From positions 149,925 to 213,924 of IMG/VR virus record IMGVR_UViG_3300042519_004024: a DNA stretch of 64,000 nucleotides. One strand, given 5' to 3'. The notes beneath the pieces are model-generated. The model was not told the origin of the DNA, made no database searches, and saw only the letters and a list, made by a program, of their open reading frames with translations. Shown here in pieces: positions 27,460-58,478 of the stretch. A program made the translations under genes and the position numbers. Within the stretch, counting starts at the first letter, position 1. Every line of letters begins with the position of its first letter.

Positions 27460-30400
27460 TTATACATCATCAAAAGATGCTCCTGTTGGTGTAATAACGA
27501 ATTCGATATCAATGTATTCTAATGCTCTTGTAGGTTTTAAGAAAATTTTACCTGTTAAAGTATTTGAATCCAAATCTTCAGGAGTGTTTGATACTGTCAC
27601 ACGGAAATCTATCAAACCTCTATCTCTTCTGATTCCATCTAATATTGGGTTAACTGAATCCAAGAAGTCTTGTCTTACTTTGTTATCGTTTTGTTCGAAT
27701 AGTAATCTAATAGCCACTGCTGAAATCAACTTACGTGCTTGTAGTAACAATCTTCTAACGTTAATTCTATCAAGTGCAGACTCTCTAATTTGTAAAGTTT
27801 TGTTACCCCAAATCACTGTACCAACATCAGAGAAAGTTGCGATTGGGTTAATTCTACCTTTATAAAGTGTGTCTCTATCGTCTTGTGTCAATTTACGTCT
27901 TGCTCTAATTGCGTTTACCAAACCTCTTGTGTAACCTGCAGATGCGAACCAAGGGAATGCGATATTGTCTGTCAAAGCTAAGTTCTTAACAACTTCAGAA
28001 GTTGGTGGAATGTATATTTGTGTATTGTTAACCGAATCTCTTGTTAAAATCCAAGGGTAATAAGTGGCGGTATAGTTAGAGTCTATTCCTGTTGCTTCTA
28101 AGTTATCTACCGTCTGTTGAGGGAAAATTAACCCTTCCTCAATATCGTTATATGTTGGTAAAAACAAATCAAAGTCAGGTGTAGTACAGATATAAATAGA
28201 GTCCGCTCTATCAGTTTCAATCATATCAATAGCGTCCTCAACAAGATTTGAGTTATTAACATAATCAATACCAGGTGTTGCAAATACATTTATGTTTGTT
28301 GCTTCAGGGTTAGCAAAAGTACTTTGTCCCCATTTGTATGCGTAAAAGTCAGTATTTGCCCAATTTTCTTGGTTTGGTCCTGAAATCGCTTTAAATGCTC
28401 CCCAACCCGTTGCGGTAGGATAAGTTATACTTGCTTCTGCACCATATTTAAATCCTGTTTGTCCTAATGCGAATGAATCTGAATTTGTTCTATATTCTCT
28501 ATATATGTCCCATCCATCAAAACCACCATAAGCCATTACCGTAAATTTACGAGTATTAAGTCTATAATATGGACTTGAACTATCTGTAGGTTCAGAGTTA
28601 AATGACCCGGCACCTACTTCAAACGCCGACTGTCCTGATGTTACATAACCATTTGCGATTGTTACAACAGTTGCTCCGCTATCCATGTGGAAACCTTTTG
28701 TTAAATAACCCCAAGCCATACCTGTGGTATCAGTACCTAAATTTGCAGGTAACTGCTTTCCTTTGTATTCAAAGAAATCGTAATCAATTCCTGATATATT
28801 AGAAATACCTAAGTATGCCTTTCTTGGATTTTCACCACTTGAAATAACAGGGTTGTCACCTCCGTTAGATGAACCAAAAGGTGGGTTATACACAACGTCA
28901 CCAGGTTTGAAATATTTAGTTTTATATACTAAGAATGGTGGTGTTGCATTTGCGTATTCTCTTGAGATAAATCCTTCAAAACCACAAGGTAGTGCGTCTA
29001 TCGGGGCTTCATCACTCATTTCTAACATTACGTATTTAGACTTAACTTGGTATTCTCCGTTTGATGTTCCTATCTTATTTGCTACGTAATTATTTTGACT
29101 TGGGTCTAATGAACAATTAGTGAAACTTTCAATAACTCTTGGGTTTTGATCGGTATCATAAAAATCTCTAATAAATACGTCAAACGTACTACTATTAAAT
29201 GATATATTACCTATAGACATTTTTACAAGTCTATTAGCTGCGTTACCGTCAGAAATTAAAACAAACTTAAATAATTTATAAACTTTATTACCTCTAAGTT
29301 CTGAAACTAAATACGGTGTTTCAGGTGTTTGATATTGTTCTAAATAGAAACCTATTGAGTCGGTATCTAATGATCTCGCTCCTGGTAATTCGATAATATC
29401 ACAGTCTAATCCTCTAATTCTACCTAATCTATATCCACTTGTTAACAAACTAGTATACGTCTCCTCGACAAATAAAGGAACCTCATTTCTGTCTTTACCA
29501 AAATTACTTCTACCAAATACTTTAGAAATAAAGTTCTTATCAGTAGATAACATTGATGTTTGGAATTCAAAATTGTCCCCGTCATAGGTTACCCCTGAAA
29601 TAAGGAATGGTGAGTATGGGTTTTTAGTAACCGCAGAATAAGAACCTGTACAAATCATTTGTACATCAGTTGTACCCGTTACTTCATAATTCGGTCCTGC
29701 TTGTGTTGCACTGTAGTTAGATATACCTCTTGATCTTAAAGTTGCAACAACTAAATCATCATAATCTAAATAAGGCGTACCTGAATAGTTTGTGTTGTAA
29801 AAAACACAAGAACCTGAGAAATTACCTCCTGATCCCGATAGTGTGTTTACCGCGGCACCAAAACCTTGTCCGTAATAACTACTTACATCGTTTACTTGTG
29901 AGTAATTAAACAATGCGTAATACCAAGCATCGTTAGTAGATGCTGATAAGTTAGCCAAAGATAGATTAACATTATTAACCCCAAAGTTTTCAGTGTATGC
30001 AGTAATAGTACCCGTACCATTAAGTGTTGTACCCGTTACTAAGTTAAATGTTCCTGCACTAACAGTACCCCAAAAGACTGCCGATGAACCTGAAGAAGGT
30101 GAGCCAACGGCAAATAAATTTACTTGGTTTGATATATAAGTTCTTAAATCTTGATCAATAGTTGATGTACCACCATTAAATTCAGTATATGTATTATAAA
30201 AATTATTATTTACATTAATAATACCAGGGACTGACATATTATATGCAATATTTGAACTTGTTCCTGTTGTTCCTGTAAATGTTAATACTGTGGATGATAC
30301 TCCTGTTGCTGCGATTGTTGCCGGATTAACGTTACCTATTGTCGTTATTGACCAAGAAGGTCCTGCGTCATATCCTGATAAACCAAGAACTCTTGTAACA

Positions 30401-30675
30401 AATAATTGATTCGATTGTTGCAAATATGCCTTTGTAATATACGCTAATTCATATTTAGGTATTTGTGTATTAACAAATTTTTCAGGACTAGTTCCTCCAA
30501 AATATACTTGGAACTCGTCAAAATTAGTTATGAATATTGGTTCAAACGCCGGACCCTGAAGAGTTTCTCCAGCCAAACCTAAAGTTGTTACACCTACACT
30601 TTGTGCAACAAAAGTTAAATCTCTTTCTGACGTATAAACCCCAGGTGAAACGAAAACTTTGTTTGATGATGCCAT
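27460..30675 (-). CDS. Contractile tail sheath (gp18-like), enlarged to 1071 aa
   Basis: FVSPGVYTSERD; PWFASAGYTRG; LYKGRINPI; WGNKTLQ..SALDRINVRRLL; KPTRALEYIDIEF. Confidence 0.95.
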   Translation of the reverse strand: MASSNKVFVSPGVYTSERDLTFVAQSVGVTTLGLAGETLQGPAFEPIFITNFDEFQVYFGGTSPEKFVNTQIPKYELAYITKAYLQQSNQLFVTRVLGLSGYDAGPSWSITTIGNVNPATIAATGVSSTVLTFTGTTGTSSNIAYNMSVPGIINVNNNFYNTYTEFNGGTSTIDQDLRTYISNQVNLFAVGSPSSGSSAVFWGTVSAGTFNLVTGTTLNGTGTITAYTENFGVNNVNLSLANLSASTNDAWYYALFNYSQVNDVSSYYGQGFGAAVNTLSGSGGNFSGSCVFYNTNYSGTPYLDYDDLVVATLRSRGISNYSATQAGPNYEVTGTTDVQMICTGSYSAVTKNPYSPFLISGVTYDGDNFEFQTSMLSTDKNFISKVFGRSNFGKDRNEVPLFVEETYTSLLTSGYRLGRIRGLDCDIIELPGARSLDTDSIGFYLEQYQTPETPYLVSELRGNKVYKLFKFVLISDGNAANRLVKMSIGNISFNSSTFDVFIRDFYDTDQNPRVIESFTNCSLDPSQNNYVANKIGTSNGEYQVKSKYVMLEMSDEAPIDALPCGFEGFISREYANATPPFLVYKTKYFKPGDVVYNPPFGSSNGGDNPVISSGENPRKAYLGISNISGIDYDFFEYKGKQLPANLGTDTTGMAWGYLTKGFHMDSGATVVTIANGYVTSGQSAFEVGAGSFNSEPTDSSSPYYRLNTRKFTVMAYGGFDGWDIYREYRTNSDSFALGQTGFKYGAEASITYPTATGWGAFKAISGPNQENWANTDFYAYKWGQSTFANPEATNINVFATPGIDYVNNSNLVEDAIDMIETDRADSIYICTTPDFDLFLPTYNDIEEGLIFPQQTVDNLEATGIDSNYTATYYPWILTRDSVNNTQIYIPPTSEVVKNLALTDNIAFPWFASAGYTRGLVNAIRARRKLTQDDRDTLYKGRINPIATFSDVGTVIWGNKTLQIRESALDRINVRRLLLQARKLISAVAIRLLFEQNDNKVRQDFLDSVNPILDGIRRDRGLIDFRVTVSNTPEDLDSNTLTGKIFLKPTRALEYIDIEFVITPTGASFDDV

Positions 30676-30762
30676 TTTTTTCTGTATTTTTTATTTATGG
30701 TTTTATTTTTTTATATAAATACCTTGAAAAAAACCAAAAAACTTTACATTTAAATAATATTT

Positions 30763-30807
30763 ATTATGTGGTGAGAAAAAATTCTGCCTTTTTTCTACCC
30801 ACATAAT
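30763..30807. promoter_or_regulatory. Long imperfect palindrome (candidate operator) between sheath and RHH genes
   Basis: ATTATGTGG-TG-AGAAAAAA-TTCTGCC-TTTTTTCT-AC-CCACATAAT; 17 of 19 positions pair. Confidence 0.6.
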
Positions 30808-30816
30808 TTATTAAAA

Positions 30817-30972
30817 ATGAAAAAGATAAAAAACATAAAAATATCAGTAGAAACACACCAAATCCTAAAAAACTATTGTGATGACAATAATTTAAAGATG
30901 TATAAATTTTTAGAATCTTTAATTAAAAAAAATTGTGAAAAGAAAAAGGATATATATGGTGATGCTATTTAA
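30817..30972 (+). CDS. Unannotated 51-aa ribbon-helix-helix-like DNA-binding protein
   Basis: MKKIKNIKISVETHQILKNYCDDNNLKMYKFLESLIKKNC...; beta-strand (KNIKIS) plus two helices, CopG/Arc-like pattern. Confidence 0.75.
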   Translation: MKKIKNIKISVETHQILKNYCDDNNLKMYKFLESLIKKNCEKKKDIYGDAI

Positions 30973-32198
30973 ACTAAGTACGCTACCGTTTTTATTGATG
31001 ATGTTTTTGTGATATCATCTTTATACGCCTGTATTAATAATGTATCCCCATCATTAATTTGTATCACATCTAAGTCATCACCAACATAGTTACCATTGAT
31101 ATAAACTGAGTACCCCGATGCGCATGACGAACCTTGAGTTAATGTTCCTCCAGTAACGCCACTAAAATTAGGTACTGTTCCTCCTTTAACACATATTGTG
31201 TTTGAGTTTCCTGAGTTTAAAGATAATGTTATTGTATTTCCTGAACAATTGGTGTATGTTAAATTAGTATTTGTTATTGCACTATATGTTGTGTTATAAC
31301 AATTAATTAAATTTTCTTGTCCTGTAACTTTTAAATCTGCAGTGTATCTAAATACTTCACTTAACTGAGTTACACCACTTAAAAAAGTGATGTCCAAGTC
31401 AAAAAAGTTAGGTTTTGGTGGATTATTAATTACTTTTTTACCTCTTACTTTAGTGTCTACTTCAAACATAGTCACTTGTCTTGAAATTGCGGGTGATATT
31501 TGGAACTCTTCTTCATCAATTAATAATCCTTTCATTGTGAATTTATAATTCGCTATATAGTATTTTCTTTTTTCTAAGTCTTTAGCCGATTCATCCGAAA
31601 CGTCATCTAATATAATTGGTATGTAATGTCCTTTAATTTGTTGGTACGCCTGTTTCGATGTGAATGTTTGCATAACAATTTTATTAAATTGATTGATTTC
31701 TCTCATTCTATTACAGAACAATTTAACGTTATAAGTTATGTCAACGGGAATTGGTTGTGGTATTTTATAAACATCAGCCCCCTTTCTTTGTCCATCCCAA
31801 GTGGGTACGGTATAGTAAAAAAACTGTCTTCTATTTGGTATGTTAGCCGCTCCACCTTGGAATGTCCCATATTTTACTTCGGGCATTCTTACTGTAGCAA
31901 TAAACGGTAAAGAAATGTTTTTATCTAAATCTTGAAAATTCCAAGTCTCAACAAATTGACTCCAATTCTGATTGGTTATTATCTTATCAATTGTTGGAAC
32001 ATTTTTTTCACTAACAACTAGCTTTAATCTATCCTTTACAAAGTCTATCATTCCAAGATCCAAATCTTCATGTAAAACTCCTTTAGGTAAAAAAGTGCCG
32101 TCATCGGTAATATCATCAAGCATTTGTTGTCTTCTTTCCCTACCAACTTTTTCAGGAATTAAAGGTAAATGTTTTTTTATTTTTTTTGGTAACGCCAT
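30969..32198 (-). CDS. Tail completion/terminator protein (gp15-like) with C-terminal extension
   Basis: LPFIATVR, IPQPIPVDITYNVKLFC..MREINQF; adjacent to sheath and head-closure genes. Confidence 0.65.
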   Translation of the reverse strand: MALPKKIKKHLPLIPEKVGRERRQQMLDDITDDGTFLPKGVLHEDLDLGMIDFVKDRLKLVVSEKNVPTIDKIITNQNWSQFVETWNFQDLDKNISLPFIATVRMPEVKYGTFQGGAANIPNRRQFFYYTVPTWDGQRKGADVYKIPQPIPVDITYNVKLFCNRMREINQFNKIVMQTFTSKQAYQQIKGHYIPIILDDVSDESAKDLEKRKYYIANYKFTMKGLLIDEEEFQISPAISRQVTMFEVDTKVRGKKVINNPPKPNFFDLDITFLSGVTQLSEVFRYTADLKVTGQENLINCYNTTYSAITNTNLTYTNCSGNTITLSLNSGNSNTICVKGGTVPNFSGVTGGTLTQGSSCASGYSVYINGNYVGDDLDVIQINDGDTLLIQAYKDDITKTSSIKTVAYLV

Positions 32199-32200
32199 TA

Positions 32201-32716
32201 TTATATTCCTTTAAATTCGTTATCATTAACAGGAGCTCCTATTATTGAACGATAAAATGGTTTGTAACCACCATAAGTATGTTTATTATCTGATAGTACA
32301 CGACCATCATTTACTACTGAATAATATCTAACCCTCGTTTCCGTTTCGTAATACCCTATGTAATCACCATAGTTAATATCAACACCTAAATTATCCAATT
32401 CTTTTTGGTAAACACCAACCTTAACATTACCAGGCTCTGTTTGTGATAATTTTGATGATCCGTAATCCGCATTTGTAGGAGCCTCTACCTGAACATATCC
32501 TTTAAATTCTACCGGAGGTAAGAATTGTATTGCATTCTCTAACGCTTCCCCATAAACATCGTCATTATTTGTTCGTTGTCTATCAACTCTGTATAAAACT
32601 AAAGTAAAATTCATATCTCCACCAAGCCATTCCTCACCCATAGAAATGTCTAAGTCAAAATCTTCTTCAGAGAAGAATTTGTTTAATCTAGTAATTGGAA
32701 CTTTATTTTGTGTCAT
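32201..32716 (-). CDS. Head closure / neck protein (gp14-like)
   Basis: LYRVD...DDVYGEA....FLPPVEF; position next to gp15-like gene. Confidence 0.6.
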   Translation of the reverse strand: MTQNKVPITRLNKFFSEEDFDLDISMGEEWLGGDMNFTLVLYRVDRQRTNNDDVYGEALENAIQFLPPVEFKGYVQVEAPTNADYGSSKLSQTEPGNVKVGVYQKELDNLGVDINYGDYIGYYETETRVRYYSVVNDGRVLSDNKHTYGGYKPFYRSIIGAPVNDNEFKGI

Positions 32717-32775
32717 ATAATATAAATACTTTGATTGATTTTTTATTAATATTTACTATTTTTATTTATAATATA

Positions 32776-34539
32776 ATGGAAGAATTAATTTCAAAAACTC
32801 CCGAAACAAGGGCTCTTCAACTATTAGACGAATATGAAGGGTCAAATAACTATATCCTGTCGTTAAAACACAAAAAACAAAATAGTAAATCATTTACTCC
32901 CACAAGATCACAAGCAGAATACATAATCAACTTTCATGGAAGAACCCCAAAAGTGGCAAAAAAATGGGTAAAGCTGGATGCTTACTTTGGAAAAAAGATG
33001 ATGGAAGATAAAATGTACACAAAAGAACCATCAGAAATTTACGTTGAGAAGTTGTTGGTTGAAAAAGATAAATCATATCATATTTGGGGTAAAATATTTT
33101 CAGGTGATACTATACACGATTTCTGGGTTCCTAAATCTGCCCTTATTAAAGATAACGAAGTAAAAAATGTCGTTATTGAATACTCAAAGTATGATCATAG
33201 ATCACCTATGGAACACCAAAAAGAGGCTATCGAAAAACTTGTAAGAAACAAAAAGTTTATTTTGGCTGATGATATGGGACTTGGAAAAACTACATCAACA
33301 ATTATTTCTGCATTAGAGACGGGAGCAAAAAAAATATTAATTGTTTGTCCAGCATCTTTAAAAATAAATTGGCAACGTGAAATTGAAAATTATTCAGACA
33401 GAACCATTTATATTGCAGAAGGTAAAAAATTTTCAAGTGAACACGATTTTGTAATAATTAATTATGATATTTTAAAAAACTTTCACGACCCAAAAAAGAA
33501 AGACGAATCCATCATTTTAAATTCTAAATTTGATTTAGTTATTATGGATGAAGCCCATATGATATCAAACCCACAAGCACAAAGAACAAAAATAGTTAAT
33601 GACTTATGTGATAAGGTTGAAAGGGTTTGGTTACTAACAGGAACTCCGATGACATCAAGACCAATGAATTATTATAATCTTTTAAGTTTAGTTGAAAGCC
33701 CCGTTGCGGCAAATTGGATGGCTTACGCAAGAAGGTACTGTAACGGATTTCAATTTAGTGTAGGTAAAAGAAAAGTATGGAACGTAACAGGGGCATCTAA
33801 CTTAGATGAGTTGAGAGAACGAACACAATCTCACATTTTAAGAAGATTAAAAGAAGATGTTTTAGATTTACCTGATAAAATTATCACACCTGTTTATTTG
33901 AGACTAAAGTCTAAGGACTACGAAGAACTTATGGGTGAGTATTTTAATTGGTATGATAATAACTCAGAAGAGTCTTCATCTTTAACTATTCAGTTTGGTA
34001 AATTAATGAAAGTTAGAAAAGTAATTGCTGAAGAAAAAGTAAAAAATACAATTGAATTGGCTGAAAATATTATTGAACAAGGAAAAAAAGTTATCATATT
34101 TACAAATTTTACTGACACCTTAAGAACCATTTATGAACATTTTGGAAAACAGGCGGTATATTTAGACGGTAGTTGTTCAAAACCTCATAGACAAAAAGCA
34201 GTGGACGATTTTCAAGAAAACGATAAAATAAAAGTTTTTGTTGGTAATTTAAAGGCTGCGGGTGTGGGTATTACTTTAACATCTGCAGAAGCAGTAATCA
34301 TGAATGATTTATCATTTGTTCCTGCAGAACATGCACAAGCAGAGGATCGATCACACAGAATCGGACAGAAAAAATCAACGTCAGTTTATTATCCATTATT
34401 TGAAAACACAATAGAAGGTGCAATTTATGATATTTTAAATAGAAAGAAAAAAATCATATCAACAGTAATGGGAGATGATATGATGGACGACGCATCTTCA
34501 ATTGAAGAAATGTTAAATATGATTTCTAATAAGAGGTGA
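32776..34539 (+). CDS. SNF2-family helicase (SMARCAL1/HARP-like)
   Basis: LADDMGLGKT, VCPASLKINW, DEAH, LTGTP, GVGITLT, QAEDRSHRIGQ; likely ATG at 32776 rather than 32695. Confidence 0.92.
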   Translation: MEELISKTPETRALQLLDEYEGSNNYILSLKHKKQNSKSFTPTRSQAEYIINFHGRTPKVAKKWVKLDAYFGKKMMEDKMYTKEPSEIYVEKLLVEKDKSYHIWGKIFSGDTIHDFWVPKSALIKDNEVKNVVIEYSKYDHRSPMEHQKEAIEKLVRNKKFILADDMGLGKTTSTIISALETGAKKILIVCPASLKINWQREIENYSDRTIYIAEGKKFSSEHDFVIINYDILKNFHDPKKKDESIILNSKFDLVIMDEAHMISNPQAQRTKIVNDLCDKVERVWLLTGTPMTSRPMNYYNLLSLVESPVAANWMAYARRYCNGFQFSVGKRKVWNVTGASNLDELRERTQSHILRRLKEDVLDLPDKIITPVYLRLKSKDYEELMGEYFNWYDNNSEESSSLTIQFGKLMKVRKVIAEEKVKNTIELAENIIEQGKKVIIFTNFTDTLRTIYEHFGKQAVYLDGSCSKPHRQKAVDDFQENDKIKVFVGNLKAAGVGITLTSAEAVIMNDLSFVPAEHAQAEDRSHRIGQKKSTSVYYPLFENTIEGAIYDILNRKKKIISTVMGDDMMDDASSIEEMLNMISNKR

Positions 34540-34550
34540 TATTTATAGTT

Positions 34551-35270
34551 ATGATATTTAAAAACTTTAATCAAAAAATAACCCTTTTAGAAACAAAATT
34601 AAAAACACATTCGTTTTCAAATGAATTGTTAATTACTGAAATTAAAAAAATTTCAATAGAAAAATTACCTTATGAGTTTGATGATTTAGATATGTTTATT
34701 GACGGTGAAACTATGAGAACTCACTATAATAAACATTACAAAGGTTACGTTGAAAAATTAAATTCTGAATTAGAAAAAATAAAAGGTAAAGATTTAGATT
34801 TAGAAGAGATTGTAAGTAGTATCACAAAATTTAACACGAAAGTTAGAAATAACGGTGGTGGAGCATTTAACCACGCACTATTTTGGAAAATGTTAACACC
34901 TAAAAAAACAAAATTAGAAAATCCTTTATTATATAAAATAGAATCAACATTTGGTTCATTTGAAAAATTTAAACAAAAATTTGAAGAGGAAGCAAAATCA
35001 AGATTCGGTTCTGGTTGGGTTTGGTTAGTAATTACTAAAGCAAATAGATTAAAAATTATAACCACCGCAAATCAAGATAATCCATTAATGTTAAAAGGTA
35101 GTAATAAAGCGTACCCACTATTAGGATTGGATTTATGGGAACATGCATATTATTTAAAATATAAAAACGAAAGAGATAGATACATCCATAATTTTTGGAA
35201 AGTAGTTAATTGGGATTTTGTTTCCGATTTATATTCAACACAAGTAAAATTAAATAAAGTTAATCAGTAA
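34551..35270 (+). CDS. sodA: Fe/Mn superoxide dismutase (Mn-type signature) with ~30-aa N-terminal extension
   Basis: KLPY, HYNKHYKGY, NNGGGAFNH, FGSGWVWL, NQDNP, DLWEHAYY; ATG 34551 lies 3 nt after TATTTATA. Confidence 0.9.
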   Translation: MIFKNFNQKITLLETKLKTHSFSNELLITEIKKISIEKLPYEFDDLDMFIDGETMRTHYNKHYKGYVEKLNSELEKIKGKDLDLEEIVSSITKFNTKVRNNGGGAFNHALFWKMLTPKKTKLENPLLYKIESTFGSFEKFKQKFEEEAKSRFGSGWVWLVITKANRLKIITTANQDNPLMLKGSNKAYPLLGLDLWEHAYYLKYKNERDRYIHNFWKVVNWDFVSDLYSTQVKLNKVNQ

Positions 35271-35293
35271 GATATTTATATAAAAAATATCAT

Positions 35294-36415: not shown

Positions 36416-36419
36416 TTTT

Positions 36420-39649: not shown

Positions 39650-39713
39650 AATGTTATAAATTTAAGTTTGGTCTATTAGCTGTCACATAAGGGCGACATT
39701 TACCTTCGTCTTA

Positions 39714-39742
39714 AATATAAGAGTAAAATGTACTCTTGTCAA
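39714..39742 (-). promoter_or_regulatory. Sigma70-like promoter of DNA polymerase with palindromic spacer
   Basis: TTGACA-N17-TATATT; AAGAGTA/TACTCTT inverted repeat spans the spacer. Confidence 0.65.
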
Positions 39743-40092: not shown

Positions 40093-40150
40093 AGAATAAA
40101 ATTATTTTTTCTTATTTTCTAATAAATGTTTTATTTGTTTTATTTAAATA

Positions 40151-40738: not shown

Positions 40739-40757
40739 ATTATTAGTATTTTATTTT

Positions 40758-43700
40758 TTATAGATCGATTAATGAGAATGTCATAGTGTTTCCACTGTCA
40801 TAGTAATATAACCATTTATCGCCACCTAAGCCTCCACCTTCTCTTAAGAACATAGTACATGTGTATGGTTGATATACGTGTGTTGCAGGATTTAAGGTAA
40901 AATCGTATCCACTAATTACTGGTTGGGTAATATTTGATTGAAAATCATTCCCGACAGTATTCCCAATAAAATTGTTAAATATATTATTATTGTTAAAATT
41001 ATCTAAAACGTCATTGCCGTAAGTATGATTACCGAATCGATTATCGTAAACATTGTCCCCCCACGTGTTTCCTGCAACAAAGAATTGACCAAAGTAGTTA
41101 CCAATTGTGTTATGAGCAAAGTCATTACCTATAGTGTTCCCAAAGAAACTAACACCAGTTCTATTAGATTCAAATCCGGTACCTATAACATTAAACCAAG
41201 AAACTTCACCAATTCTATTATAACCAGCATTATCGTTAACTTCATTTAGATTAAAGAAGTACCCAATTTCATTACCCGCGAAATTTACCCCAAGTAAGTT
41301 TTCTTGGAATAAATCCCCGATTCTATTATAATTAAATCCGTCACCAAATGTGTTTGTATTACAACCCCAACCTATTTGATTATTATTATACCCACCACCC
41401 GAAGTATCGTATGTTACATTGTAAATAAAACTATCCCCAATTGTATTTTGAATAAAATTATTTCTAATTATATTTCCACCATCTCCAAGATTAGGAGCTT
41501 CATTATCAATACCAAAATAGTTACCTATTATATTTGAATTAAAATCATTTAAAATGTAGTTTGAAATTCCTGTATCGTTTAAACTACCAAAATAATTACC
41601 TATTTGGTTATTAGTAAAACCTGATCCTATGTTATTATTAATAAAATGATTACCTATGTGGTTATCCTCAAAAAAGGCATCACCTAACGTTACCTCAACG
41701 GAAGTAACATCGGCTAACGTATCAACCCCATTATCAATAGTATCTCCATTACTAAACCCACCAATATATAAATTAACCGTCATTGCACTAAAACCATCAT
41801 CAGTAACGACTTCTGCGGTACCACCTACACCATTATCAACAACATTCCCGACTTGAAAACTTGTAACTCCCGTTACATTAAATGTGGCATCATTTCCTCC
41901 TGTGGTTATTGTTATGGGATCAGTTACTTGATAATATGTTCCGGGATTATTAATTGTAACTCCTGTTATAACACCTAAACCGTCAGTTAATATATCTACA
42001 GTTAAAGAACTTCCAAGTCCTCCTGTTGTTGGGACATTCGTAGAGTCGGAGTACCCTGTACCCCCACTTGTTAATGTTATCCCTAAAACAGGTCCTTGTA
42101 AGTTTTCATAATAAACAGTAGTCACTATACCAATTTTATTACCTCCAGTTCCGTTAGAGTCCAAACCAAAATTATTACCAATTACGTTATTAAGAAAATA
42201 ATTACCAATTATATTTTTATTAACTTTATCAAAACTACCAAAGTAGTCCCCAATTACGTTACCTTCAAAACTATTGCCAATCACGTTGTTAGAAAAATAA
42301 TTTTTTATGTTATTATTTTCAAAATTATCACCAACAGTATTGTCGGTAAAATAATTCCCAACAACATTATTGTACATATATTTCCCAATCAAATTTCTCT
42401 CAAAAGAATCATTTATTACGTTACCCTGATTTTGTGAACCACCATAACCAAAATCATTATCAAATTTATTTTCTATGAAAAAATCACCTATTTTATTGCT
42501 TGAAAACCTAACACCGCTATTAGGTTCGGTATATACTGAATTCCATTCAGTGTCTTGTGGACTTACGGAACTATTCCACGATCCTTCTGTTGCAATATTA
42601 TAAATTGCCCCACTACTATCTCTAGCGATTTCCAAGACTCCTGGTATAATAATATCAATATCATTAACACCATTTCTTTTTGTAAATGTAACTGTAGGTC
42701 CTATGTTATTACCAAGTGAATCCATTTCAGTTCTTTCGTATTGGAAACCTCCTCCGTTACCATTTAATGTCCATTGATTAAATTTAATTTTAAAATACTG
42801 AGATGTGGATGTAACTTTCATTACGAATTCTTTACCTAAGATTGTATCATCAATAGAGCCATCTAAAGAATCATTAAAAATATCATAAGTTCTACCCGTG
42901 ATATTAGATAAATCACCCCAACCAAAAAGATCATTAATTGGTTGATTACTTTGAAAGTACTGACCTATTTTATTGTTGAAAAATTGATTAGGGATTATAT
43001 TCCCATTAAAATAATGTTTAGTTTCATTATTATAAAAACTATCATTAATTGTATTATTATTAAAACCATTACCAATAAGATTATGATTAAAATCAGACCC
43101 AATTTGATTTTGATTAAACCCATTAAGTATTGTGTTACCTTGAGATGATCCATTAATAGTATTCCCTTGGTAGTTTGTACCAATTTGATTGTTTTGGAAA
43201 TTTTGTCTTACTGTATTTCTGTTAAATCCGTTACGAATATAATTTCTATAAAATTCAAAATTATCTAAGTTACCAAAGTCACCAATTAAATTATCTTGAA
43301 AGTCATCTAATATTTCATTTTTATAAAACGCAGAATAAATAACATTACTATTAAACCCATTTCCAATAATGTTGTCTTCAAAATCAACACCATTCTCATT
43401 TAATAATTGGTTATATTTAAAATCATTACCAATATGGTTAGAGGTTAAATTTGCGTTTATTAAATTATCATAAAAGTAGTGACCAATAATATTACCATCT
43501 ATGTCGTTTACTGATACGTTTCCTGAACAATAATCACCCCAAACGTTATTTTGATTGTCAGTTCCAAATGTATTATTGTAACAGTAATCGCCAAATTTAT
43601 TACTTTCGTATTGCCCTTCTAAAAATACATTGTTTGGTAGTAAAAATGTTCCAGGAAATACATTTGTATAGTTATTTGTGTAATTACCTATATAATTATT

Positions 43701-44576
43701 TTTAGCATAATCGTTTGATATTGCGTCTCCAAATGTTGTATACTCAATAAAGTCAGAGGTTTTAACATTTGTTCTTTTGTAACTAAAGTAACCACCACCG
43801 TTTGTTTCTTCTATTGTACCATAAATTACTGCTCCAGCACCTGTGGTGTTAATAGTATCGCCCGAAACAGTCATTAGGGTATTACCCGTTATTGAAACAA
43901 CTTCAAAATAAGAAGGAGATACGTTGTTTGTATATATTACGTCACCAACAGTTAATGAACTAAAAGTTGTACTAGTACCACTTACAATTCCTCCTGATAA
44001 TATTTCTACAGTTCCGTTTAATCTTAACTTGTCTCTGTATGTAAATAATCTATATCTTTTAAATAAAATATTTCTGTGATCATAATCAGTTCTATTATTA
44101 AACTCATCAATTCTTTCATAAATTCTTCCGTAAGAAACACCACTAGTAACCTCTGTAATATTATATGTAATATCGTATTTAATAAAATCATTAGGGTATG
44201 TTGGTTGATACGCTACCGGACTAATGGTACTATTACTCGTTGATAACACAACAATAGGTTCAACAGGTCCTTGTTTGTAATTTCCTGTAGTTATTGGATT
44301 ACCGTCATAGTCAAAGTCTGGTTGATCGTAACAAGTTTGGAAGTCATCAATTGAGTAGAACGATCCTTGGGTTAGTCCACTATTACTTATTAATGTAACT
44401 AAACTTGAGTATGATGTTGGTGTTGCACTTAATATGTAAGATTGTAAATCACTAACATATGTGTGAACCGTATCTCCTGTTACAGAAGAAAAGTAAGTAA
44501 CTAAAGGTACTAAGTCTAAATTTCCTATATCTCCGTTACTTATGTATGGTAATTCCGATATTTTTTTATTTGCCAT
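40758..44576 (-). CDS. Tail fibre/spike-like protein with Asn-rich beta-helix repeats
   Basis: MANKKISELP start; dozens of ~11-aa N-x-IG-xx-F-xx-N repeats interrupted by globular inserts. Confidence 0.75.
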   Translation of the reverse strand: MANKKISELPYISNGDIGNLDLVPLVTYFSSVTGDTVHTYVSDLQSYILSATPTSYSSLVTLISNSGLTQGSFYSIDDFQTCYDQPDFDYDGNPITTGNYKQGPVEPIVVLSTSNSTISPVAYQPTYPNDFIKYDITYNITEVTSGVSYGRIYERIDEFNNRTDYDHRNILFKRYRLFTYRDKLRLNGTVEILSGGIVSGTSTTFSSLTVGDVIYTNNVSPSYFEVVSITGNTLMTVSGDTINTTGAGAVIYGTIEETNGGGYFSYKRTNVKTSDFIEYTTFGDAISNDYAKNNYIGNYTNNYTNVFPGTFLLPNNVFLEGQYESNKFGDYCYNNTFGTDNQNNVWGDYCSGNVSVNDIDGNIIGHYFYDNLINANLTSNHIGNDFKYNQLLNENGVDFEDNIIGNGFNSNVIYSAFYKNEILDDFQDNLIGDFGNLDNFEFYRNYIRNGFNRNTVRQNFQNNQIGTNYQGNTINGSSQGNTILNGFNQNQIGSDFNHNLIGNGFNNNTINDSFYNNETKHYFNGNIIPNQFFNNKIGQYFQSNQPINDLFGWGDLSNITGRTYDIFNDSLDGSIDDTILGKEFVMKVTSTSQYFKIKFNQWTLNGNGGGFQYERTEMDSLGNNIGPTVTFTKRNGVNDIDIIIPGVLEIARDSSGAIYNIATEGSWNSSVSPQDTEWNSVYTEPNSGVRFSSNKIGDFFIENKFDNDFGYGGSQNQGNVINDSFERNLIGKYMYNNVVGNYFTDNTVGDNFENNNIKNYFSNNVIGNSFEGNVIGDYFGSFDKVNKNIIGNYFLNNVIGNNFGLDSNGTGGNKIGIVTTVYYENLQGPVLGITLTSGGTGYSDSTNVPTTGGLGSSLTVDILTDGLGVITGVTINNPGTYYQVTDPITITTGGNDATFNVTGVTSFQVGNVVDNGVGGTAEVVTDDGFSAMTVNLYIGGFSNGDTIDNGVDTLADVTSVEVTLGDAFFEDNHIGNHFINNNIGSGFTNNQIGNYFGSLNDTGISNYILNDFNSNIIGNYFGIDNEAPNLGDGGNIIRNNFIQNTIGDSFIYNVTYDTSGGGYNNNQIGWGCNTNTFGDGFNYNRIGDLFQENLLGVNFAGNEIGYFFNLNEVNDNAGYNRIGEVSWFNVIGTGFESNRTGVSFFGNTIGNDFAHNTIGNYFGQFFVAGNTWGDNVYDNRFGNHTYGNDVLDNFNNNNIFNNFIGNTVGNDFQSNITQPVISGYDFTLNPATHVYQPYTCTMFLREGGGLGGDKWLYYYDSGNTMTFSLIDL

Positions 44577-44630
44577 CTTTTTATTTTATAAATAGTTTTT
44601 TATTGTAATAATTCTTTAAAAAAAATTAAT

Positions 44631-45503
44631 TTAGTTATATATCCTTATTTCTACAGGTAAATTTGAAAAATTTGGTGTTGATAACAACGTACCGTCATAA
44701 AGAAATATGTTTATTGAAATAAAATTTGATGTGGATTTTTGTCCTGTACATATGTAAAGTACCCCACCACCATTAATGTTTTCAACAGATATTAATATAT
44801 TAGAGGAGGTAAACGCACCTGTCTTAGTTGCTCTAATTATACCATTATTAGGGTTACTCCACTGAATATCATTTGGACTTACACCACTACCGTCTCCTAT
44901 AGTATTTTCTAATTGTGTTACAGTAAATATCCCACCACTTAATGAAACTAACGCTTTATAAATTGTGTAATTAACGGAAGGTGTTGTTGTAATACCAGTA
45001 ACGTTAAATGTTCCGCCTGTGGTATTTGTAAATGTTATTGTACCTGCAGAAAATGTTCCACCTGTAATATATACGTCTGTTAATCCCGTATAAAACCCTG
45101 TCACATTGAAAGTACCTCCAGTGTTATTTGTGAATATTGTTGTTCCGTTTGAATAGGTACCTCCTGTCACTCTTATGTCTGTTGGTAAATTCTGATATGT
45201 TGTTGCAGAAATTGTTCCATTTACAGTTAATCCTGTAACAGTATTAATTGTTGCACTAAAATTATTATTATAGTTGTCCGTAATTGTAAAAGTATTAAGG
45301 TTATTGTATGTAAACCCTGTAACCTTATTTATCGTAACAGATTTAGTACCTCCTGTTGGGTTGGTTATATTAATTGTTCCGTTTGAATATGAGAACCCAC
45401 TTACACCTAATTCTTGTAAGTAGTATAAATTCATATCCATATCATAAAATGATAGTTTTAAATTTTTTGCGTTTGGTCCGTATTGTCTTGTAACTAATGG
45501 CAT
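44631..45503 (-). CDS. Thr/Gly-rich fibre-like structural protein
   Basis: 34-aa repeat D..[VI]TGGT[YF]S.GT..FTN.TGGTFNVTG x2 plus degenerate copy. Confidence 0.65.
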   Translation of the reverse strand: MPLVTRQYGPNAKNLKLSFYDMDMNLYYLQELGVSGFSYSNGTINITNPTGGTKSVTINKVTGFTYNNLNTFTITDNYNNNFSATINTVTGLTVNGTISATTYQNLPTDIRVTGGTYSNGTTIFTNNTGGTFNVTGFYTGLTDVYITGGTFSAGTITFTNTTGGTFNVTGITTTPSVNYTIYKALVSLSGGIFTVTQLENTIGDGSGVSPNDIQWSNPNNGIIRATKTGAFTSSNILISVENINGGGVLYICTGQKSTSNFISINIFLYDGTLLSTPNFSNLPVEIRIYN

Positions 45504-45527
45504 TTTTTTATTTAATAAATATAAAGT

Positions 45528-47465
45528 TTATTCAAAATAATTAGGTTCAATATAATCAGCGTCCACATAACCGTTAGGTATTTCTGAATAACAGTTGGGA
45601 CACCAAAAATCAAATAAATCAAATCTATTTCGTAATATTCTAAAATTGTGTTGTATTTGAGGCGTAGTTAACGGTTCAACATACATCCTAAATTGAGATA
45701 TTCCTCCCATAAATGTTCCTCCAAATGTTTGTTCCATTAATATATTTGTGGTTAAAGAAGACAAAGATGTTGCTGACAATATATTATTTGGGAATAATTC
45801 AGGATCTTGAATATAAGGTCCGTTAGTCATAGTACTTGAGGAGAAAATTAAATGGTTGTGTAATCCTTGAGTCCCACCACCAAACGAAAAATTAAATGGA
45901 ACCCCTATTTGTTTTTCTTTTTCAGTATTTAATTCTCTTGGAATTATCTCTTCAAAATTTTCAATAACCATATATAGATATCCGTTTACATAAATTTTAA
46001 GCAATCCCATTCTATACCAAGTATCATCAAACCATTTCCTATCAAATTCAATTTTAAATATTTGACTTTCTTTTGGTGAACCTATGTGTGTTTGTGGTGG
46101 CATTATTAGATTATATGACGCCCCATCAAGTATTGATTGAAATGTTCTAATTCTTAAATCGCCCAATCCCCCTAAATGTAATAAGTCACAGTCTTCTATT
46201 GTTGTATATCTTTCGAAAACCGCACTTACCATAACCCATCTATCTTCAGTATCCGCAGAACAAGGAAGATTACAAACTTCATATATTGGTGGTCCACAAA
46301 CTTCAGTTATAGTGTACCCTGTTTGAAAAGTAACGCCAGTAACTTCACAAGTTCCTGTAGTTATACAATCTCCCGTAATTTTTAAATATTTTACACAGAT
46401 ACTTGGATTTACGGGACACCCACTAAATCTTATTGACATTGCGTTTGATAGTACGTCAAATTTAGGATCAATAGGTGGTTGCGGGACAATTTCACCACAA
46501 GCAGGTTGACCACAAGTACACCCAATATTATGTACCACTGTAGTAGCACTTTGTGGGTATACATAAACACAATTAGAATTAGTCACTCCCGTATCAGAAC
46601 ACGAACATGTTTTTAAACTTTTAGAAGTTGCCGTGACTCTTGTATATGTTGATGCCGTTGAAGGTTGCCCCTCAGCAATATGGTAATATTTATTTTCAGC
46701 TCTTGTACCAAAAAAGAAAAATGTACCAGCATTGTCAGGATATCTGTCATTAAGATACTCGTTTATATTTTTATCTATCGGGTATTGATCAACATTTCTT
46801 GGTTTTAAAATCATTTCAGCCGTCCACCCCTTATTTACTCTTTCAGGAAAAACTTCATAATTGTAACCAAATAATTTGTAAAATCCTTGATAGAAACCTC
46901 CGTACAATTGTTGATAATAACCTATGTTTGGTTCGTTTTTTGACAACACATTATATATAGTATTTTTAGGTATGCCTGAAAATCTAATATTCGGTGATTG
47001 GGTGTACCCCGTAACCAAATTCATTTTAAATCTTCTATCTCTATAGTACGGATCAAACTTATAATCGTTTCTTATACCCATAGAATAGTATAATGTTTGT
47101 CCAGACATTTTAGTATACAAACCATTATCGGTACCAACTAAACCAACATCACAAGCCCCTGTAAATGCCGAGTAACAACTTAAATCGTCATTATTTGGGT
47201 TATAATAATTTTTAGACACTAAAGTAGAACCTGAAGAATATTCATTAAAATCAATAACTAACTGTAATGAAGAATCCGAAGAACTTAAGTCCATGTAAAT
47301 TGGGAGTCTATTACCATCATTTTCAGCAATAATATCCGTAGAGAACACAACTTCTTCGTCGTAATCCCTTTCATCAGAAGCCAAAGTTAAATCAAAATAT
47401 TGTCCATAATTTAATTTAGCTCGGTATCTTGGGTAATAATAACTATTTAAATTTTGACTAGGCAT
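45528..47465 (-). CDS. Cys-rich structural protein, possible LamG/ConA-like fold
   Basis: GWTAEMILK, LKIYVNG, FMGGISQFRMY..PL..PQIQHNF; >20 Cys; late motif upstream. Confidence 0.55.
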   Translation of the reverse strand: MPSQNLNSYYYPRYRAKLNYGQYFDLTLASDERDYDEEVVFSTDIIAENDGNRLPIYMDLSSSDSSLQLVIDFNEYSSGSTLVSKNYYNPNNDDLSCYSAFTGACDVGLVGTDNGLYTKMSGQTLYYSMGIRNDYKFDPYYRDRRFKMNLVTGYTQSPNIRFSGIPKNTIYNVLSKNEPNIGYYQQLYGGFYQGFYKLFGYNYEVFPERVNKGWTAEMILKPRNVDQYPIDKNINEYLNDRYPDNAGTFFFFGTRAENKYYHIAEGQPSTASTYTRVTATSKSLKTCSCSDTGVTNSNCVYVYPQSATTVVHNIGCTCGQPACGEIVPQPPIDPKFDVLSNAMSIRFSGCPVNPSICVKYLKITGDCITTGTCEVTGVTFQTGYTITEVCGPPIYEVCNLPCSADTEDRWVMVSAVFERYTTIEDCDLLHLGGLGDLRIRTFQSILDGASYNLIMPPQTHIGSPKESQIFKIEFDRKWFDDTWYRMGLLKIYVNGYLYMVIENFEEIIPRELNTEKEKQIGVPFNFSFGGGTQGLHNHLIFSSSTMTNGPYIQDPELFPNNILSATSLSSLTTNILMEQTFGGTFMGGISQFRMYVEPLTTPQIQHNFRILRNRFDLFDFWCPNCYSEIPNGYVDADYIEPNYFE

Positions 47466-49390: not shown

Positions 49391-49391
49391 T

Positions 49392-57341: not shown

Positions 57342-57342
57342 A

Positions 57343-57906: not shown

Positions 57907-57907
57907 T

Positions 57908-58474: not shown

Positions 58475-58478
58475 TAAC

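What the first reader, a model, noticed from the sequence alone, without database searches (positions are those of the whole stretch)
27460..47465. [S/T]-[G/A]-x-[T/S] motif recurs across unrelated virion proteins: candidate glycosylation sequon
Seen (hand counts): about 11 copies in the ~260-aa sheath insertion (TGVS, TGTT, SAGT, TAYT, SAST, SAVT, SGVT...), 7 in the last ~130 aa of the gp15-like protein, about 13 in the 290-aa fibre, about 12 in the 645-aa protein (SGST, SGQT, TGYT, TGVT, SATT...), and more in the 1272-aa fibre and both giant baseplate proteins (SGNT, TGNT, SGGT, SGTT). By contrast about 1 in the 966-aa polymerase, 0 in the helicase, and about 2 each in RNR and SNF2. The motif sits in lineage-specific, probably surface-exposed insertions. 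Inference: it is the acceptor signal for the phage GT operon, giving a glycan-coated tail; it differs from the Bacteroidota D-[S/T]-[A/I/L/V/M/T] O-glycosylation sequon. Caveat: these regions are S/T/G-rich anyway.
Basis: partly seen in the sequence, partly recalled or inferred. Interest (0 to 1): 0.8.

Follow-up and report, generated by a model that had tools for sequence, protein, structure and literature searches.

The report
Conserved Ser/Thr-Gly motif on phage tail
Five unrelated tail proteins of an uncultured T4-like freshwater phage carry far more copies of a short Ser/Thr-Gly/Ala-x-Ser/Thr motif than chance allows, and the motif goes together with a conserved phage sugar-transferase operon, so it may be a sugar-attachment signal, but this is unproven.

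Summary
[ST][GA]x[ST] occurs 62 times in five tail proteins: the sheath insertion, the C-terminus of a 409-aa neck-region protein, a 645-aa lectin-fold protein and two fibres. Only 18.6 copies are expected from 30-residue block shuffles (z=10.8). The other 44 window proteins show 28 versus 26.9. The two giant baseplate proteins are not enriched. Re-ordered versions of the motif, N-x-S/T and the Bacteroidota sequon are not enriched either.

The five regions show no profile-level homology. Across more than 100 orthologues the sites persist as a pattern, with S/T and G/A interchanging and x free. T4, Mel-JY01, a Flavobacterium phage and ESCO5 lack the enrichment.

One nested clade lost the motif in the 645-aa homologue, lacks the motif-rich sheath insertion, and shows no glycosyltransferase in 35 kb. 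Motif-rich clades, down to 26% identity, keep the GT pair 50105/52622 within 8 kb.

Best reading (about 0.4): acceptor sites for phage O-glycosyltransferases. Almost as likely: a lineage-specific beta-turn motif, with the GTs serving DNA or host glycans. No direct evidence of modification exists.

The parts
27460..30675 (-). Tail sheath gene (1071 aa) with a lineage-specific insertion
   Evidence: PHROG 23 tail sheath (E 9e-53) and Pfam Phage_sheath_1/1C hits in the C-terminal third. 14 motif copies.
29416..30375 (-). Sheath insertion, residues 101-420, holding 11 of the 14 sheath motif copies
   Evidence: 11 vs 3.7 expected (p<0.0005); the rest of the protein has 3 vs 2.3. 9 of the 11 sites are kept as the pattern in at least 77% of 118 homologues. 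Motif S/T class conservation is 0.96 against 0.74 for other S/T (p=2e-4). Residues 116-333 are absent from the sheath of the motif-poor clade.
30969..32198 (-).
   Evidence: 7 copies vs 1.3 expected, all at residues 274-364. No Pfam or PHROG hit and no BLAST similarity to T4 gp15.
31107..31379 (-). Motif-rich C-terminal module of the 409-aa protein (residues 274-364)
   Evidence: This module is missing in 7 of 17 orthologues, whose counts fall to 0-2. It is also absent from the 350-352-aa orthologue of the motif-poor clade.
40758..44576 (-). 1272-aa fibre, part of a variable fibre cassette
   Evidence: 16 copies vs 5.3 expected. A homologue is present in only 4 of 58 related loci. It also carries about 30 N-x-I-G repeats.
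44631..45503 (-). 290-aa fibre with the highest motif density (4.5 per 100 aa)
   Evidence: 13 vs 3.3 expected. It contains repeat units such as NNTGGTFNVTG and the box ISATTYQNLP, which is shared with other fibres. 9 of 13 sites are kept in at least 4 of 6 homologues.
45528..47465 (-). 645-aa virion protein with a concanavalin-A/LamG-like jelly-roll fold; core gene of the lineage
   Evidence: 12 vs 2.1 expected. 8 of 12 sites are kept as the pattern in at least 41 of 57 orthologues. The AlphaFold model (mean pLDDT 63.8) places motifs just before beta-strands or in low-confidence loops. Fold matches are ConA/LamG-like virion proteins. The superfamily of 833 cluster representatives is mostly motif-rich.
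50105..51316 (+). Core glycosyltransferase 1 (403 aa)
   Evidence: PHROG 7162 glycosyltransferase, E 6e-44. Present in 52 of 58 close loci. Present at 50-57% identity next to the 645-aa homologue in distant motif-rich clades.
51313..52625 (+). PolB-type 3'-5' exonuclease (51313-52014) and dUTPase/dCTP-deaminase-like gene (52014-52625), lying between the two core GTs
   Evidence: Pfam DNA_pol_B_exo2 and dUTPase/DCD hits. The dUTPase-like gene stays between the two GTs in distant clades.
52622..54046 (+). Core glycosyltransferase 2 (474 aa): a GT-A domain plus a C-terminal domain of about 240 aa with unknown function
   Evidence: Pfam Glyco_tranf_2_5, E 1e-25, residues 14-212. The protein atlas shows the same two-domain architecture in virus-only clusters. 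Present in every close relative with enough flanking sequence and in distant motif-rich clades.
54046..59510 (+). Variable glycan-building island: GalT-like gene (55418-56065), GT2 (56637-57341), two methyltransferases (57343-57906, 57908-58474) and an SDR nucleotide-sugar epimerase/reductase (58479-59510)
   Evidence: Pfam hits. The nearest NCBIfam match for 58479 is GDP-L-fucose synthase, below the curated cut-off. Homologues occur in only 1-3 of 58 related loci.
62225..63028 (+). Further GT2-family glycosyltransferase
Evidence: Pfam Glycos_transf_2, E 3e-6.

Best explanation
The window is the last 64 kb of a 214-kb uncultured, low-GC, T4-like myovirus contig. A short motif, best written hydrophobic-[S/T]-[G/A]-x-[S/T, mostly T]-hydrophobic, marks the turn just before a beta-strand. 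It sits in accessory domains of the tail: the sheath insertion, the neck-protein C-terminal module, the lectin-fold 645-aa protein and the fibres.

I propose that these are acceptor sites for phage-encoded cytoplasmic O-glycosyltransferases. One or both core enzymes (50105, 52622) would add the first sugar to the Ser/Thr hydroxyl of newly made tail proteins. The variable island (more GTs, two methyltransferases, a deoxy-sugar epimerase/reductase) would extend and diversify the glycan. The result would be a sugar-coated tail.

Shown: the enrichment, its dependence on residue order, its conservation, its restriction to this lineage, its loss in one clade, and the GT synteny.

Inferred: that the motif is recognised by a GT, which residue is the acceptor, surface exposure of the motif domains (not measured), and any biological role such as shielding, stability or adhesion.
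For: 1. Pooled enrichment is 62 vs 18.6 (z=10.8) against block shuffles; other proteins give 28 vs 26.9.
2. Re-ordered motifs are not enriched.
3. The five regions have no BLAST or profile-profile homology, with hhalign probability at most 20%.
4. Sites persist as a pattern with S/T and G/A exchange. Position x is more variable than the protein average (identity 0.42 vs 0.63). Motif S/T are more conserved than other S/T (0.96 vs 0.74, p=2e-4; 0.87 vs 0.68, p=9e-4).
5. Positions 1 and 4 are coupled. P(S/T at +2 | S/T-G) is 0.64, against 0.13 after D/N-G.
6. Control phages show no such pattern: T4, Mel-JY01 and Flavobacterium phage immuto (one fibre enriched 2-fold only) and ESCO5.
7. The fold tolerates loss of the motif. 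A nested clade at about 30% identity has D/N-G-x-E/R or unrelated residues at the same sites. Its sheath lacks the motif-rich insertion and its 14 virion proteins total 43 vs 31. No GT gene appears on its 35.5-kb and 23-kb contigs.
8. In motif-rich clades down to 26% identity, the GT pair lies within 0-8 kb of the 645-aa homologue, and neighbouring structural proteins are also motif-rich, for example 35 vs 9.8.
9. Relatives carry mucin-like Pro/Thr/Ser repeat proteins of over 1000 aa in the fibre cassette.
10. The codons encoding the motif are diverse, so it is not a DNA-level signal.
Against: - There is no direct evidence of any modification.
- The GT-motif association amounts to 1 independent contrast on well-supported branches (2 on all branches), which cannot reach significance. 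Absence of GTs from the rest of the motif-poor genomes is unproven.
- Within the main clade every genome has both GTs, so there is no internal control.
- The core GTs are interleaved with an exonuclease and a dUTPase-like gene. They lack the TATAAATA late-promoter-like box found before several structural genes. This suits a DNA-modification or early role.
- GT-A enzymes of phages are known to glycosylate DNA (bioRxiv 10.1101/2023.12.21.572611).
- Hydrophobic flanks, a small residue at position 2 and a location at strand starts fit a structural beta-turn. Many sites are fixed in position over deep divergence, which is more typical of structure than of sequons.
- ESCO5 has distant 50105 homologues but no enrichment.
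- The sheath model was too poor to map exposure (pLDDT 38.9).
Confidence: 0.4

Rival explanations
1. Purely structural motif. Hydrophobic-[ST]-G-x-T-hydrophobic would be a favoured beta-turn or beta-bulge at the start of strands in the beta-rich accessory domains of this lineage. The Ser/Thr side chains would cap the turn, as Asp/Asn do elsewhere. The GT operon would serve something else: DNA hypermodification, host-surface glycans or another target.
For: - The motif lies directly before predicted strands (78 before E82, 99 before E102, 121 before E125, 306 before E308, 382 before E384).
- Positions -1, 3 and 5 are hydrophobic in 46-57% of copies and position 2 is Gly or Ala.
- In the motif-poor clade the same turn at site 152 keeps Gly, with D/N in place of S/T. 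This is the classic turn-forming alternative.
- Sites are positionally conserved down to 30% identity.
- In the fibres the motif is part of longer repeat units.
- The GTs sit among nucleotide-metabolism genes without a late-promoter-like box.
- Multi-GT DNA glycosylation clusters are documented (PMC13326640; bioRxiv 10.1101/2023.12.21.572611).
Against: - It gives no reason why five non-homologous regions of one genome share the motif, while beta-rich tail proteins of T4, Mel-JY01, ESCO5 and the sister clade at similar GC do not.
- It does not explain why positions 1 and 4 are so tightly coupled.
- It does not explain why the clade that lost the motif from the 645-aa homologue also lacks the motif-rich sheath insertion and C-terminal module.
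- No thymidylate-synthase-like, TET-like or C5-cytosine methyltransferase gene, the hallmarks of DNA glycosylation clusters, is present in the 64-kb window.
Confidence: 0.35
2. The motif is recognised in trans, but not by a glycosyltransferase. It could be a docking or recognition element for a shared assembly chaperone or decoration protein, a site of another modification such as phosphorylation, or a repeated low-affinity glycan-binding surface.
For: The same arguments for recognition in trans apply: non-homologous contexts, pattern conservation, and loss across proteins in one clade. Several conserved small genes of unknown function lie between the 645-aa gene and the GTs (47517-50021). They are conserved in 53 of 58 loci, and homologues of 48250 and 48989 accompany the GT operon in distant clades.
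Against: No kinase, chaperone or decoration protein was identified. The only recognisable protein-modifying candidates are the GTs. A hydroxyl-bearing pair of residues is the natural target of O-glycosylation.
Confidence: 0.12
3. Artefact: the counts reflect Ser/Thr/Gly-rich composition or internal repeats only.
For: The regions are rich in S, T and G, and the fibres contain tandem repeats that multiply the motif. One relative's fibre has a 34-residue unit repeated four times.
Against: Block shuffles down to 15 residues retain the 2-6-fold excess. Re-ordered motifs built from the same residues are not enriched. The sheath insertion and the 645-aa protein have no internal repeats detectable by BLAST. 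Truly S/T-rich control proteins are at or below expectation (T4 gp34 3 vs 7.9, Hoc 1 vs 3.6).
Confidence: 0.03

Closest known systems
Mycobacteriophage virion glycosylation (Freeman et al. 2023, Cell Host Microbe 31:1216; known to me from the citation in PMC12619734 and from general knowledge, as the paper itself was not held)
   Same: Phage-encoded glycosyltransferases would modify the phage's own virion proteins in the cytoplasm, giving a glycan coat.
   Different: In mycobacteriophages the glycans are reported at the C-termini of the capsid and tail-tube subunits, with no short defined sequon. Here the candidate sites are an internal four-residue motif in the sheath insertion, fibres and a lectin-fold protein. 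The tail tube has no copy. Modification here is not demonstrated.
General O-glycosylation of Bacteroidota, sequon D-[S/T]-[A/I/L/V/M/T]
   Same: A short Ser/Thr-centred sequon used on many unrelated proteins. Bacteroidota hosts are plausible for low-GC aquatic phages, but the host is not established here.
   Different: That system acts in the periplasm through a lipid-linked glycan. Its sequon is not enriched in these proteins (15 vs 12.9). The motif here has no Asp, needs Gly or Ala after the first Ser/Thr, and needs a second Ser/Thr at +3.
Autotransporter heptosyltransferases (AAH/TibC family) acting on AIDA-I/TibA (from general knowledge)
   Same: Cytoplasmic O-glycosyltransferases that modify many Ser/Thr at short turns between beta-strands of a repetitive beta-structure. 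They recognise a structural element rather than a long sequence.
   Different: Those enzymes use a different fold and ADP-heptose as donor. Their substrates are bacterial adhesins. No homology to 50105 or 52622 was found.
Chlorovirus PBCV-1 capsid protein glycosylation by virus-encoded enzymes (review PMC7019647)
   Same: A virus carries its own GTs, sugar-modifying enzymes and methyltransferases, and glycosylates a structural protein at non-canonical sites in the cytoplasm.
   Different: That is a eukaryotic virus with N-linked glycans on Asn of the capsid protein. Here O-linkage on tail proteins of a bacteriophage is proposed.
Phage DNA glycosylation gene clusters (bioRxiv 10.1101/2023.12.21.572611; PMC13326640)
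   Same: Arrays of several phage GTs, including GT-A folds, lying next to nucleotide-metabolism genes and variable between relatives.
   Different: Those clusters include a thymidylate-synthase-like hydroxylase/hydroxymethylase, or a TET-like dioxygenase plus a C5-methyltransferase, and often a nucleotide kinase. None of these was found in the window. They would not explain a protein motif.

Membership tests
Phage virion O-glycosylation system | The phage genome encodes glycosyltransferases and sugar-building enzymes | tested here: met
   50105 matches PHROG 7162 glycosyltransferase. 52622, 56637 and 62225 are GT2-type, 55418 is GalT-like, and there are two methyltransferases and an SDR epimerase/reductase.
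Phage virion O-glycosylation system | Glycan covalently attached to Ser/Thr of virion proteins | not testable with these tools
   Needs mass spectrometry or glycan staining of virions. The phage is uncultured.
Phage virion O-glycosylation system | Presence of the acceptor sites tracks presence of the transferase across genomes | tested here: inconclusive
   All 23 motif-rich loci with context have the GTs nearby. All motif-poor loci with context lack them within 10-20 kb. This is only 1-2 independent contrasts, and the motif-poor genomes are incomplete.
Sequon (a short acceptor signal used across unrelated proteins) | Enrichment beyond composition in non-homologous, exposed proteins, and absence from cytoplasmic proteins | tested here: met
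   62 vs 18.6 in five proteins and 28 vs 26.9 in 44 others. No homology among the regions. Surface exposure itself could not be computed.
Bacteroidota D-[S/T]-[A/I/L/V/M/T] O-glycosylation | Enrichment of that sequon in the candidate glycoproteins | tested here: not met
   15 vs 12.9 expected in the five proteins.
Phage DNA glycosylation cluster | GTs adjacent to a thymidylate-synthase-like enzyme, or a TET-like dioxygenase with a C5-cytosine methyltransferase | tested here: not met
   No such Pfam or PHROG hit among the window proteins scanned. Only the 64-kb window and 10 kb upstream were examined, not the other 140 kb or so of the contig.
Contractile tail sheath (T4 gp18 type) | Sheath C-terminal domains | tested here: met
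   PHROG 23 (E 9e-53) and Pfam PF17482/PF04984 at residues 846-1062. tblastn matches to T4-like sheaths over residues 645-1071.
Concanavalin-A/LamG-like virion proteins | Jelly-roll beta-sandwich fold | tested here: inconclusive
   The model has mean pLDDT 63.8 and pTM 0.69. Foldseek matches to ConA/LamG-like viral proteins have E 1e-4 to 1e-3 but low TM-scores. PDB matches are only at E about 0.01.
   BLASTP against T4 gp15 gives E>2. No Pfam or PHROG hit. Its position next to the sheath is the only support.

The most novel reading that the evidence does not exclude
A widespread lineage of aquatic T4-like phages uses a defined four-residue O-glycosylation sequon, [S/T]-[G/A]-x-[S/T] at beta-turns. 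A conserved pair of phage glycosyltransferases reads it, and a hypervariable sugar island elaborates the glycan. The tail sheath, neck and fibres would thus carry a strain-specific glycan coat. This would be the first sequence-defined sequon for phage virion glycosylation, and a new cytoplasmic protein O-glycosylation system.
Probability: 0.35. Interest if true: 0.85.

Novelty: new variant of a known kind. Interest (0 to 1): 0.62.

Why it matters
Virion glycosylation has been shown for very few phages, and without a recognisable sequon. If this motif is an acceptor site, it gives a rule for reading glycosylation sites directly from phage genomes.

It would also point to a compact cytoplasmic O-glycosylation enzyme pair of possible use in glycoengineering. 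It would suggest that an abundant group of freshwater phages (833 cluster representatives of the 645-aa family) carries variable glycan coats on its tails. That has consequences for adsorption, stability and recognition by grazers or host defences.

If the motif proves to be structural, it is still an unusual case. A turn type would then have been fixed across unrelated proteins of one viral lineage and lost again in a sub-lineage.

Tried and rejected
- Composition artefact: rejected by block shuffles and re-ordered motifs.
- N-x-S/T sequon: it looked frequent in the 290-aa fibre but is at expectation.
- Hidden shared domain: BLAST all-against-all and hhalign of family profiles found nothing.
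- DNA-level motif: the codons are diverse.
- Generic property of fibres or sheaths: rejected with T4, Mel-JY01, immuto and ESCO5.
- Co-variation of motif density between the 645-aa and 409-aa orthologues within the main clade: none (rho 0.11).
- A GT-minus control inside the main clade: none exists.
- Cultured relatives of the fibres, the 645-aa protein, its distant homologues or GT 52622: no tblastn match in 50,697 phage records.
- Megablast of the region: no match.
- Context of motif-poor homologues P0360 and P0384: contigs too short or DNA not available. A viral-contig scan with P0384 found nothing.
- Sheath structure: the model was too poor to use (pLDDT 38.9), and no coordinates are returned, so exposure could not be computed.
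- PDB sequence searches of the fibres and GTs: nothing informative.
- Literature: no paper describing this motif was found. Freeman et al. 2023 and the journal version of Pyle et al. 2024 were not held.
- Identity with the 'moraphage' lineage (PMC12619734): could not be established.

Full report
**What the window is.** The 64-kb window has about 30% GC. It is the last 64 kb of the 213,924-bp IMG/VR contig IMGVR_UViG_3300042519_004024.

The minus strand carries a T4-like tail module:
- a baseplate wedge gene;
- two giant proteins of 2337 and 2129 aa;
- a tape-measure-like protein, hub and tube;
- a 1071-aa sheath and a 409-aa protein next to it;
- after a replication block (SNF2 helicase, Fe/Mn superoxide dismutase, family-B polymerase), a fibre cassette and a 645-aa protein.

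A plus-strand block at 47517-63780 is transcribed divergently from the 645-aa gene. It holds:
- glycosyltransferase 50105 (PHROG 7162, E 6e-44);
- a PolB-type exonuclease and a dUTPase/dCTP-deaminase-like gene;
- glycosyltransferase 52622 (Pfam PF13712 GT-A domain plus a 240-aa C-terminal domain);
- a GalT-like gene and a GT2;
- two methyltransferases and an SDR sugar epimerase/reductase;
- PhoH and another GT2.

There is no close cultured relative. Megablast finds nothing. The sheath is at most about 31% identical to those of Microcystis phage Mel-JY01, Flavobacterium phage immuto and T4-like phages.

- Against whole-protein shuffles, only five of 49 proteins are enriched.
- The excess holds when residues are shuffled only within 60-, 30- or 15-residue blocks. 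This keeps local composition.
- Pooled, the five proteins have 62 copies against 18.6 expected (z=10.8). The other 44 proteins have 28 against 26.9.
- In the sheath the excess lies entirely in residues 101-420 (11 vs 3.7). The rest of the protein has 3 vs 2.3.
- The five other orderings of the same residue classes are at expectation. So are N-x-S/T and the Bacteroidota sequon D-[ST]-[AILVMT].
- An unbiased scan of all gapped 4-mers puts SA.T, TG.T and SG.T near the top. The only comparable hits come from an obviously structural fibre repeat, N.IG.

Two parts of the finding fail. The two giant proteins are not enriched (7 vs 4.8 and 5 vs 5.2). The 'gp15-like' label has no sequence support. Fibre counts are partly multiplied by internal repeats.

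**Anatomy of the motif.** From 61 copies the fuller pattern is hydrophobic-[S/T]-[G/A]-x-[T>S]-hydrophobic:
- position -1 is hydrophobic in 57% of copies (Val 4.2-fold over background);
- position 2 is Gly in 77%;
- position 3 is hydrophobic in 46%;
- position 4 is Thr in 75%;
- position 5 is hydrophobic in 52%;
- upstream positions alternate in the manner of a beta-strand.

Codons are diverse (Ser from both TCN and AGY), so this is not a nucleotide signal.

The AlphaFold model of the 645-aa protein (mean pLDDT 63.8) is a beta-sandwich. Five motifs sit just before strands and the others lie in low-confidence loops. Foldseek relates the fold to concanavalin-A/LamG-like virion proteins of cyanophages and uncultured phages. 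The sheath model failed (pLDDT 38.9).

**Unrelated contexts.** BLAST all-against-all and profile-profile comparison of family alignments were run on the sheath insertion, the neck-protein module, the 645-aa protein and the fibre N-terminus. Neither shows homology (hhalign probability at most 20%).

**Conservation.** The 645-aa protein has 58 related viral loci at 51-100% identity. Eight of its 12 sites remain the pattern in at least 41 of 57 orthologues. Site 121, for example, reads TGQT, SGET, TGET, SGNT or TGDT, and fits the pattern in 57 of 57. Orthologues carry 5-25 copies (all but three have at least 12) against 2-9 expected.

In 118 sheath homologues, 11 of 14 sites remain the pattern in at least 77%.

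Motif Ser/Thr are more class-conserved than other Ser/Thr of the same regions (0.96 vs 0.74, p=2e-4; 0.87 vs 0.68, p=9e-4). Position x is more variable than average.

Positions 1 and 4 are coupled. After S/T-G the +2 residue is S/T in 64% of cases, against 13% after D/N-G.

**Specificity to the lineage.** The following show no enrichment:
- T4 sheath, fibres, Hoc and baseplate proteins;
- Mel-JY01 structural proteins, including a sheath with an insertion;
- ESCO5 structural proteins.

Flavobacterium phage immuto has one fibre with a 2-fold excess. Baseplate genes upstream of the window are also not enriched.

**The natural experiment.** A profile search found 833 cluster representatives of the 645-aa family. 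Nearly all distant members (about 30% identity) are motif-rich, with ratios of 3-11. A few have none.

On a tree, five motif-poor sequences form one well-supported clade (SH-aLRT 99) nested among motif-rich groups. The loss is therefore derived. Two further motif-poor sequences sit elsewhere on long branches.

At aligned sites the poor clade either keeps only the Gly, flanked by D/N and E/R, or has unrelated residues. The fold therefore does not require the motif.

Contigs of this clade (23 kb and 35.5 kb) show the same core genes at 40-55% identity and similar GC, but:
- the sheath is 782-791 aa and lacks window residues 116-333;
- the motif is replaced at sites 347, 360 and 680 in both sheaths, and at 666 in one of them;
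- the neck protein lacks its C-terminal module;
- 14 virion proteins total 43 vs 31 expected;
- no glycosyltransferase gene is present.

Other distant clades (26-40% identity to the window protein) are motif-rich. They keep 50105 (50-57% identity), the dUTPase-like gene and 52622 (47-53%) within 0-8 kb of the 645-aa homologue. Their neighbouring structural proteins are also motif-rich, for example 35 vs 9.8 and 24 vs 8.1.

The association is perfect across 29 loci. Phylogenetically, however, it is one well-supported contrast, or two on all branches, and cannot be significant. The rest of the motif-poor genomes is unseen.

**Interpretation.** Five observations are hard to explain by protein structure alone and point to recognition in trans:
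- a short hydroxyl-bearing motif is selected as a pattern;
- it occurs in non-homologous accessory tail domains;
- it is restricted to one lineage;
- the fold can do without it;
- one sub-lineage lacks it in all the orthologous tail proteins examined.

The only recognisable candidates are the two core glycosyltransferases. The variable island of further GTs, methyltransferases and a deoxy-sugar enzyme (homologues in only 1-3 of 58 relatives) looks like a glycan-diversifying locus. Some relatives carry proteins of over 1000 aa made of Pro/Thr/Ser mucin-like repeats in the fibre cassette.

The structural alternative is almost as likely (0.35). The motif has the form and position of a beta-turn. 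Asp/Asn replace Ser/Thr where it is lost. Many sites are fixed in position. The core GTs are embedded among nucleotide-metabolism genes. They also lack the TATAAATA box seen 19-54 nt upstream of four late-type structural genes.

Phage GT arrays, including GT-A folds, are known to glycosylate DNA (bioRxiv 10.1101/2023.12.21.572611; PMC13326640). Their hallmark partners (thymidylate-synthase-like enzyme, TET-like dioxygenase, C5-methyltransferase) are absent from the window. A third possibility (0.12) is recognition by another partner or another modification.

**Comparison with the known.** Virion glycosylation by phage enzymes is established for mycobacteriophages, but at the C-termini of capsid and tube proteins and without a sequon. 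That information comes from the citation in PMC12619734 and from general knowledge. The Bacteroidota sequon is different and not enriched here. The nearest mechanistic analogy is the autotransporter heptosyltransferases, which modify Ser/Thr at turns of beta-structures (general knowledge). Chloroviruses show that a virus can carry its own complete protein-glycosylation machinery (PMC7019647). If confirmed, this would be a new variant of a known kind: a sequence-defined sequon for phage tail O-glycosylation.

Noticed in passing
L035 16046-19831; L043 17133-20486; L038 15428-18604; L058 19398-21941: Relatives carry proteins of about 850 to over 1200 aa in the fibre cassette. The two read (L035, L043) are made largely of mucin-like Pro/Thr/Ser repeats (TPTLTSTSTPTLTS...). 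All four are far below expectation for the motif, presumably because the repeats hold almost no Gly or Ala. They look like classic O-glycosylation substrates.
   Followed up: partly
window 40758-44576 (-): The 1272-aa fibre holds about 30 copies of an N-x-I-G-[N/D]-x-F unit (N.IG 32 vs 3.5 expected). The units recur about every 9-10 residues in three blocks, which suggests a solenoid-like repeat of unknown fold.
   Followed up: partly
window 44631-45503 (-), fibre residues 90-108; also L041 9305-12568 and L019 11951-14568: A conserved box, L-[ST]-[AV]-N-[TG]-[IF]-S-A-T-T-Y-x-N-L-P, recurs in otherwise different fibres of related phages, sometimes several times in one protein. It may mark a module junction in the variable fibre cassette.
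   Followed up: partly
window 34536-35270 (+): A complete Fe/Mn superoxide dismutase gene (Pfam Sod_Fe_N and Sod_Fe_C, E 1e-22 to 1e-40) lies inside the phage replication block.
   Followed up: no
window upstream of 16491-22880, 25782-26270, 32201-32716 and 45528-47465: The T4 late-promoter-like octamer TATAAATA lies 19-54 nt upstream of four structural genes. No copy precedes the glycosyltransferase operon at its larger gaps (before 48989, 50105 and 61155). There are 22 copies in the whole window on both strands.
   Followed up: partly
window 63031-63780 (+): The 249-aa protein has a weak match to the sigma-70 (ECF) superfamily (E 0.001, below the curated cut-off). It could be a phage late sigma factor.
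   Followed up: no
motif copies in the five window proteins: Thr at motif position 1 is encoded by ACG about three times as often as Thr is overall in the same genes, where ACG makes up 9.6% of Thr codons. Unexplained.
   Followed up: no
L059 38678-40441 (T4 uvsW); L061 3789-5387 and L145 9707-11782 (large terminases): P-loop enzymes show small excesses of the same pattern (5 vs 0.9, 5 vs 1.1, 6 vs 1.3), possibly from ATPase/helicase motifs (not checked). This is a reminder that the pattern can arise for catalytic or structural reasons.
   Followed up: no
L143 7402-10546 and L144 30493-33771 (Escherichia phage ESCO5): ESCO5 has four adjacent glycosyltransferase genes next to its primase and DNA polymerase. 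Its record gives two matches to 50105 at about 26% identity. It also carries dTDP-rhamnose synthesis genes. Its structural proteins show no motif enrichment (51 vs 43).
   Followed up: yes
   Followed up: yes
L147 12168-16670: The family-B DNA polymerase of the motif-poor clade is 1500 aa and has a faint intein-splicing hit. The window's polymerase is 966 aa.
   Followed up: no
L064 19974-20462 (contig upstream of the window): A gene cut off by the locus end, just beyond the baseplate genes, already has 4 motif copies in 163 aa (1.1 expected). It may be a further motif-bearing tail protein outside the window.
   Followed up: no
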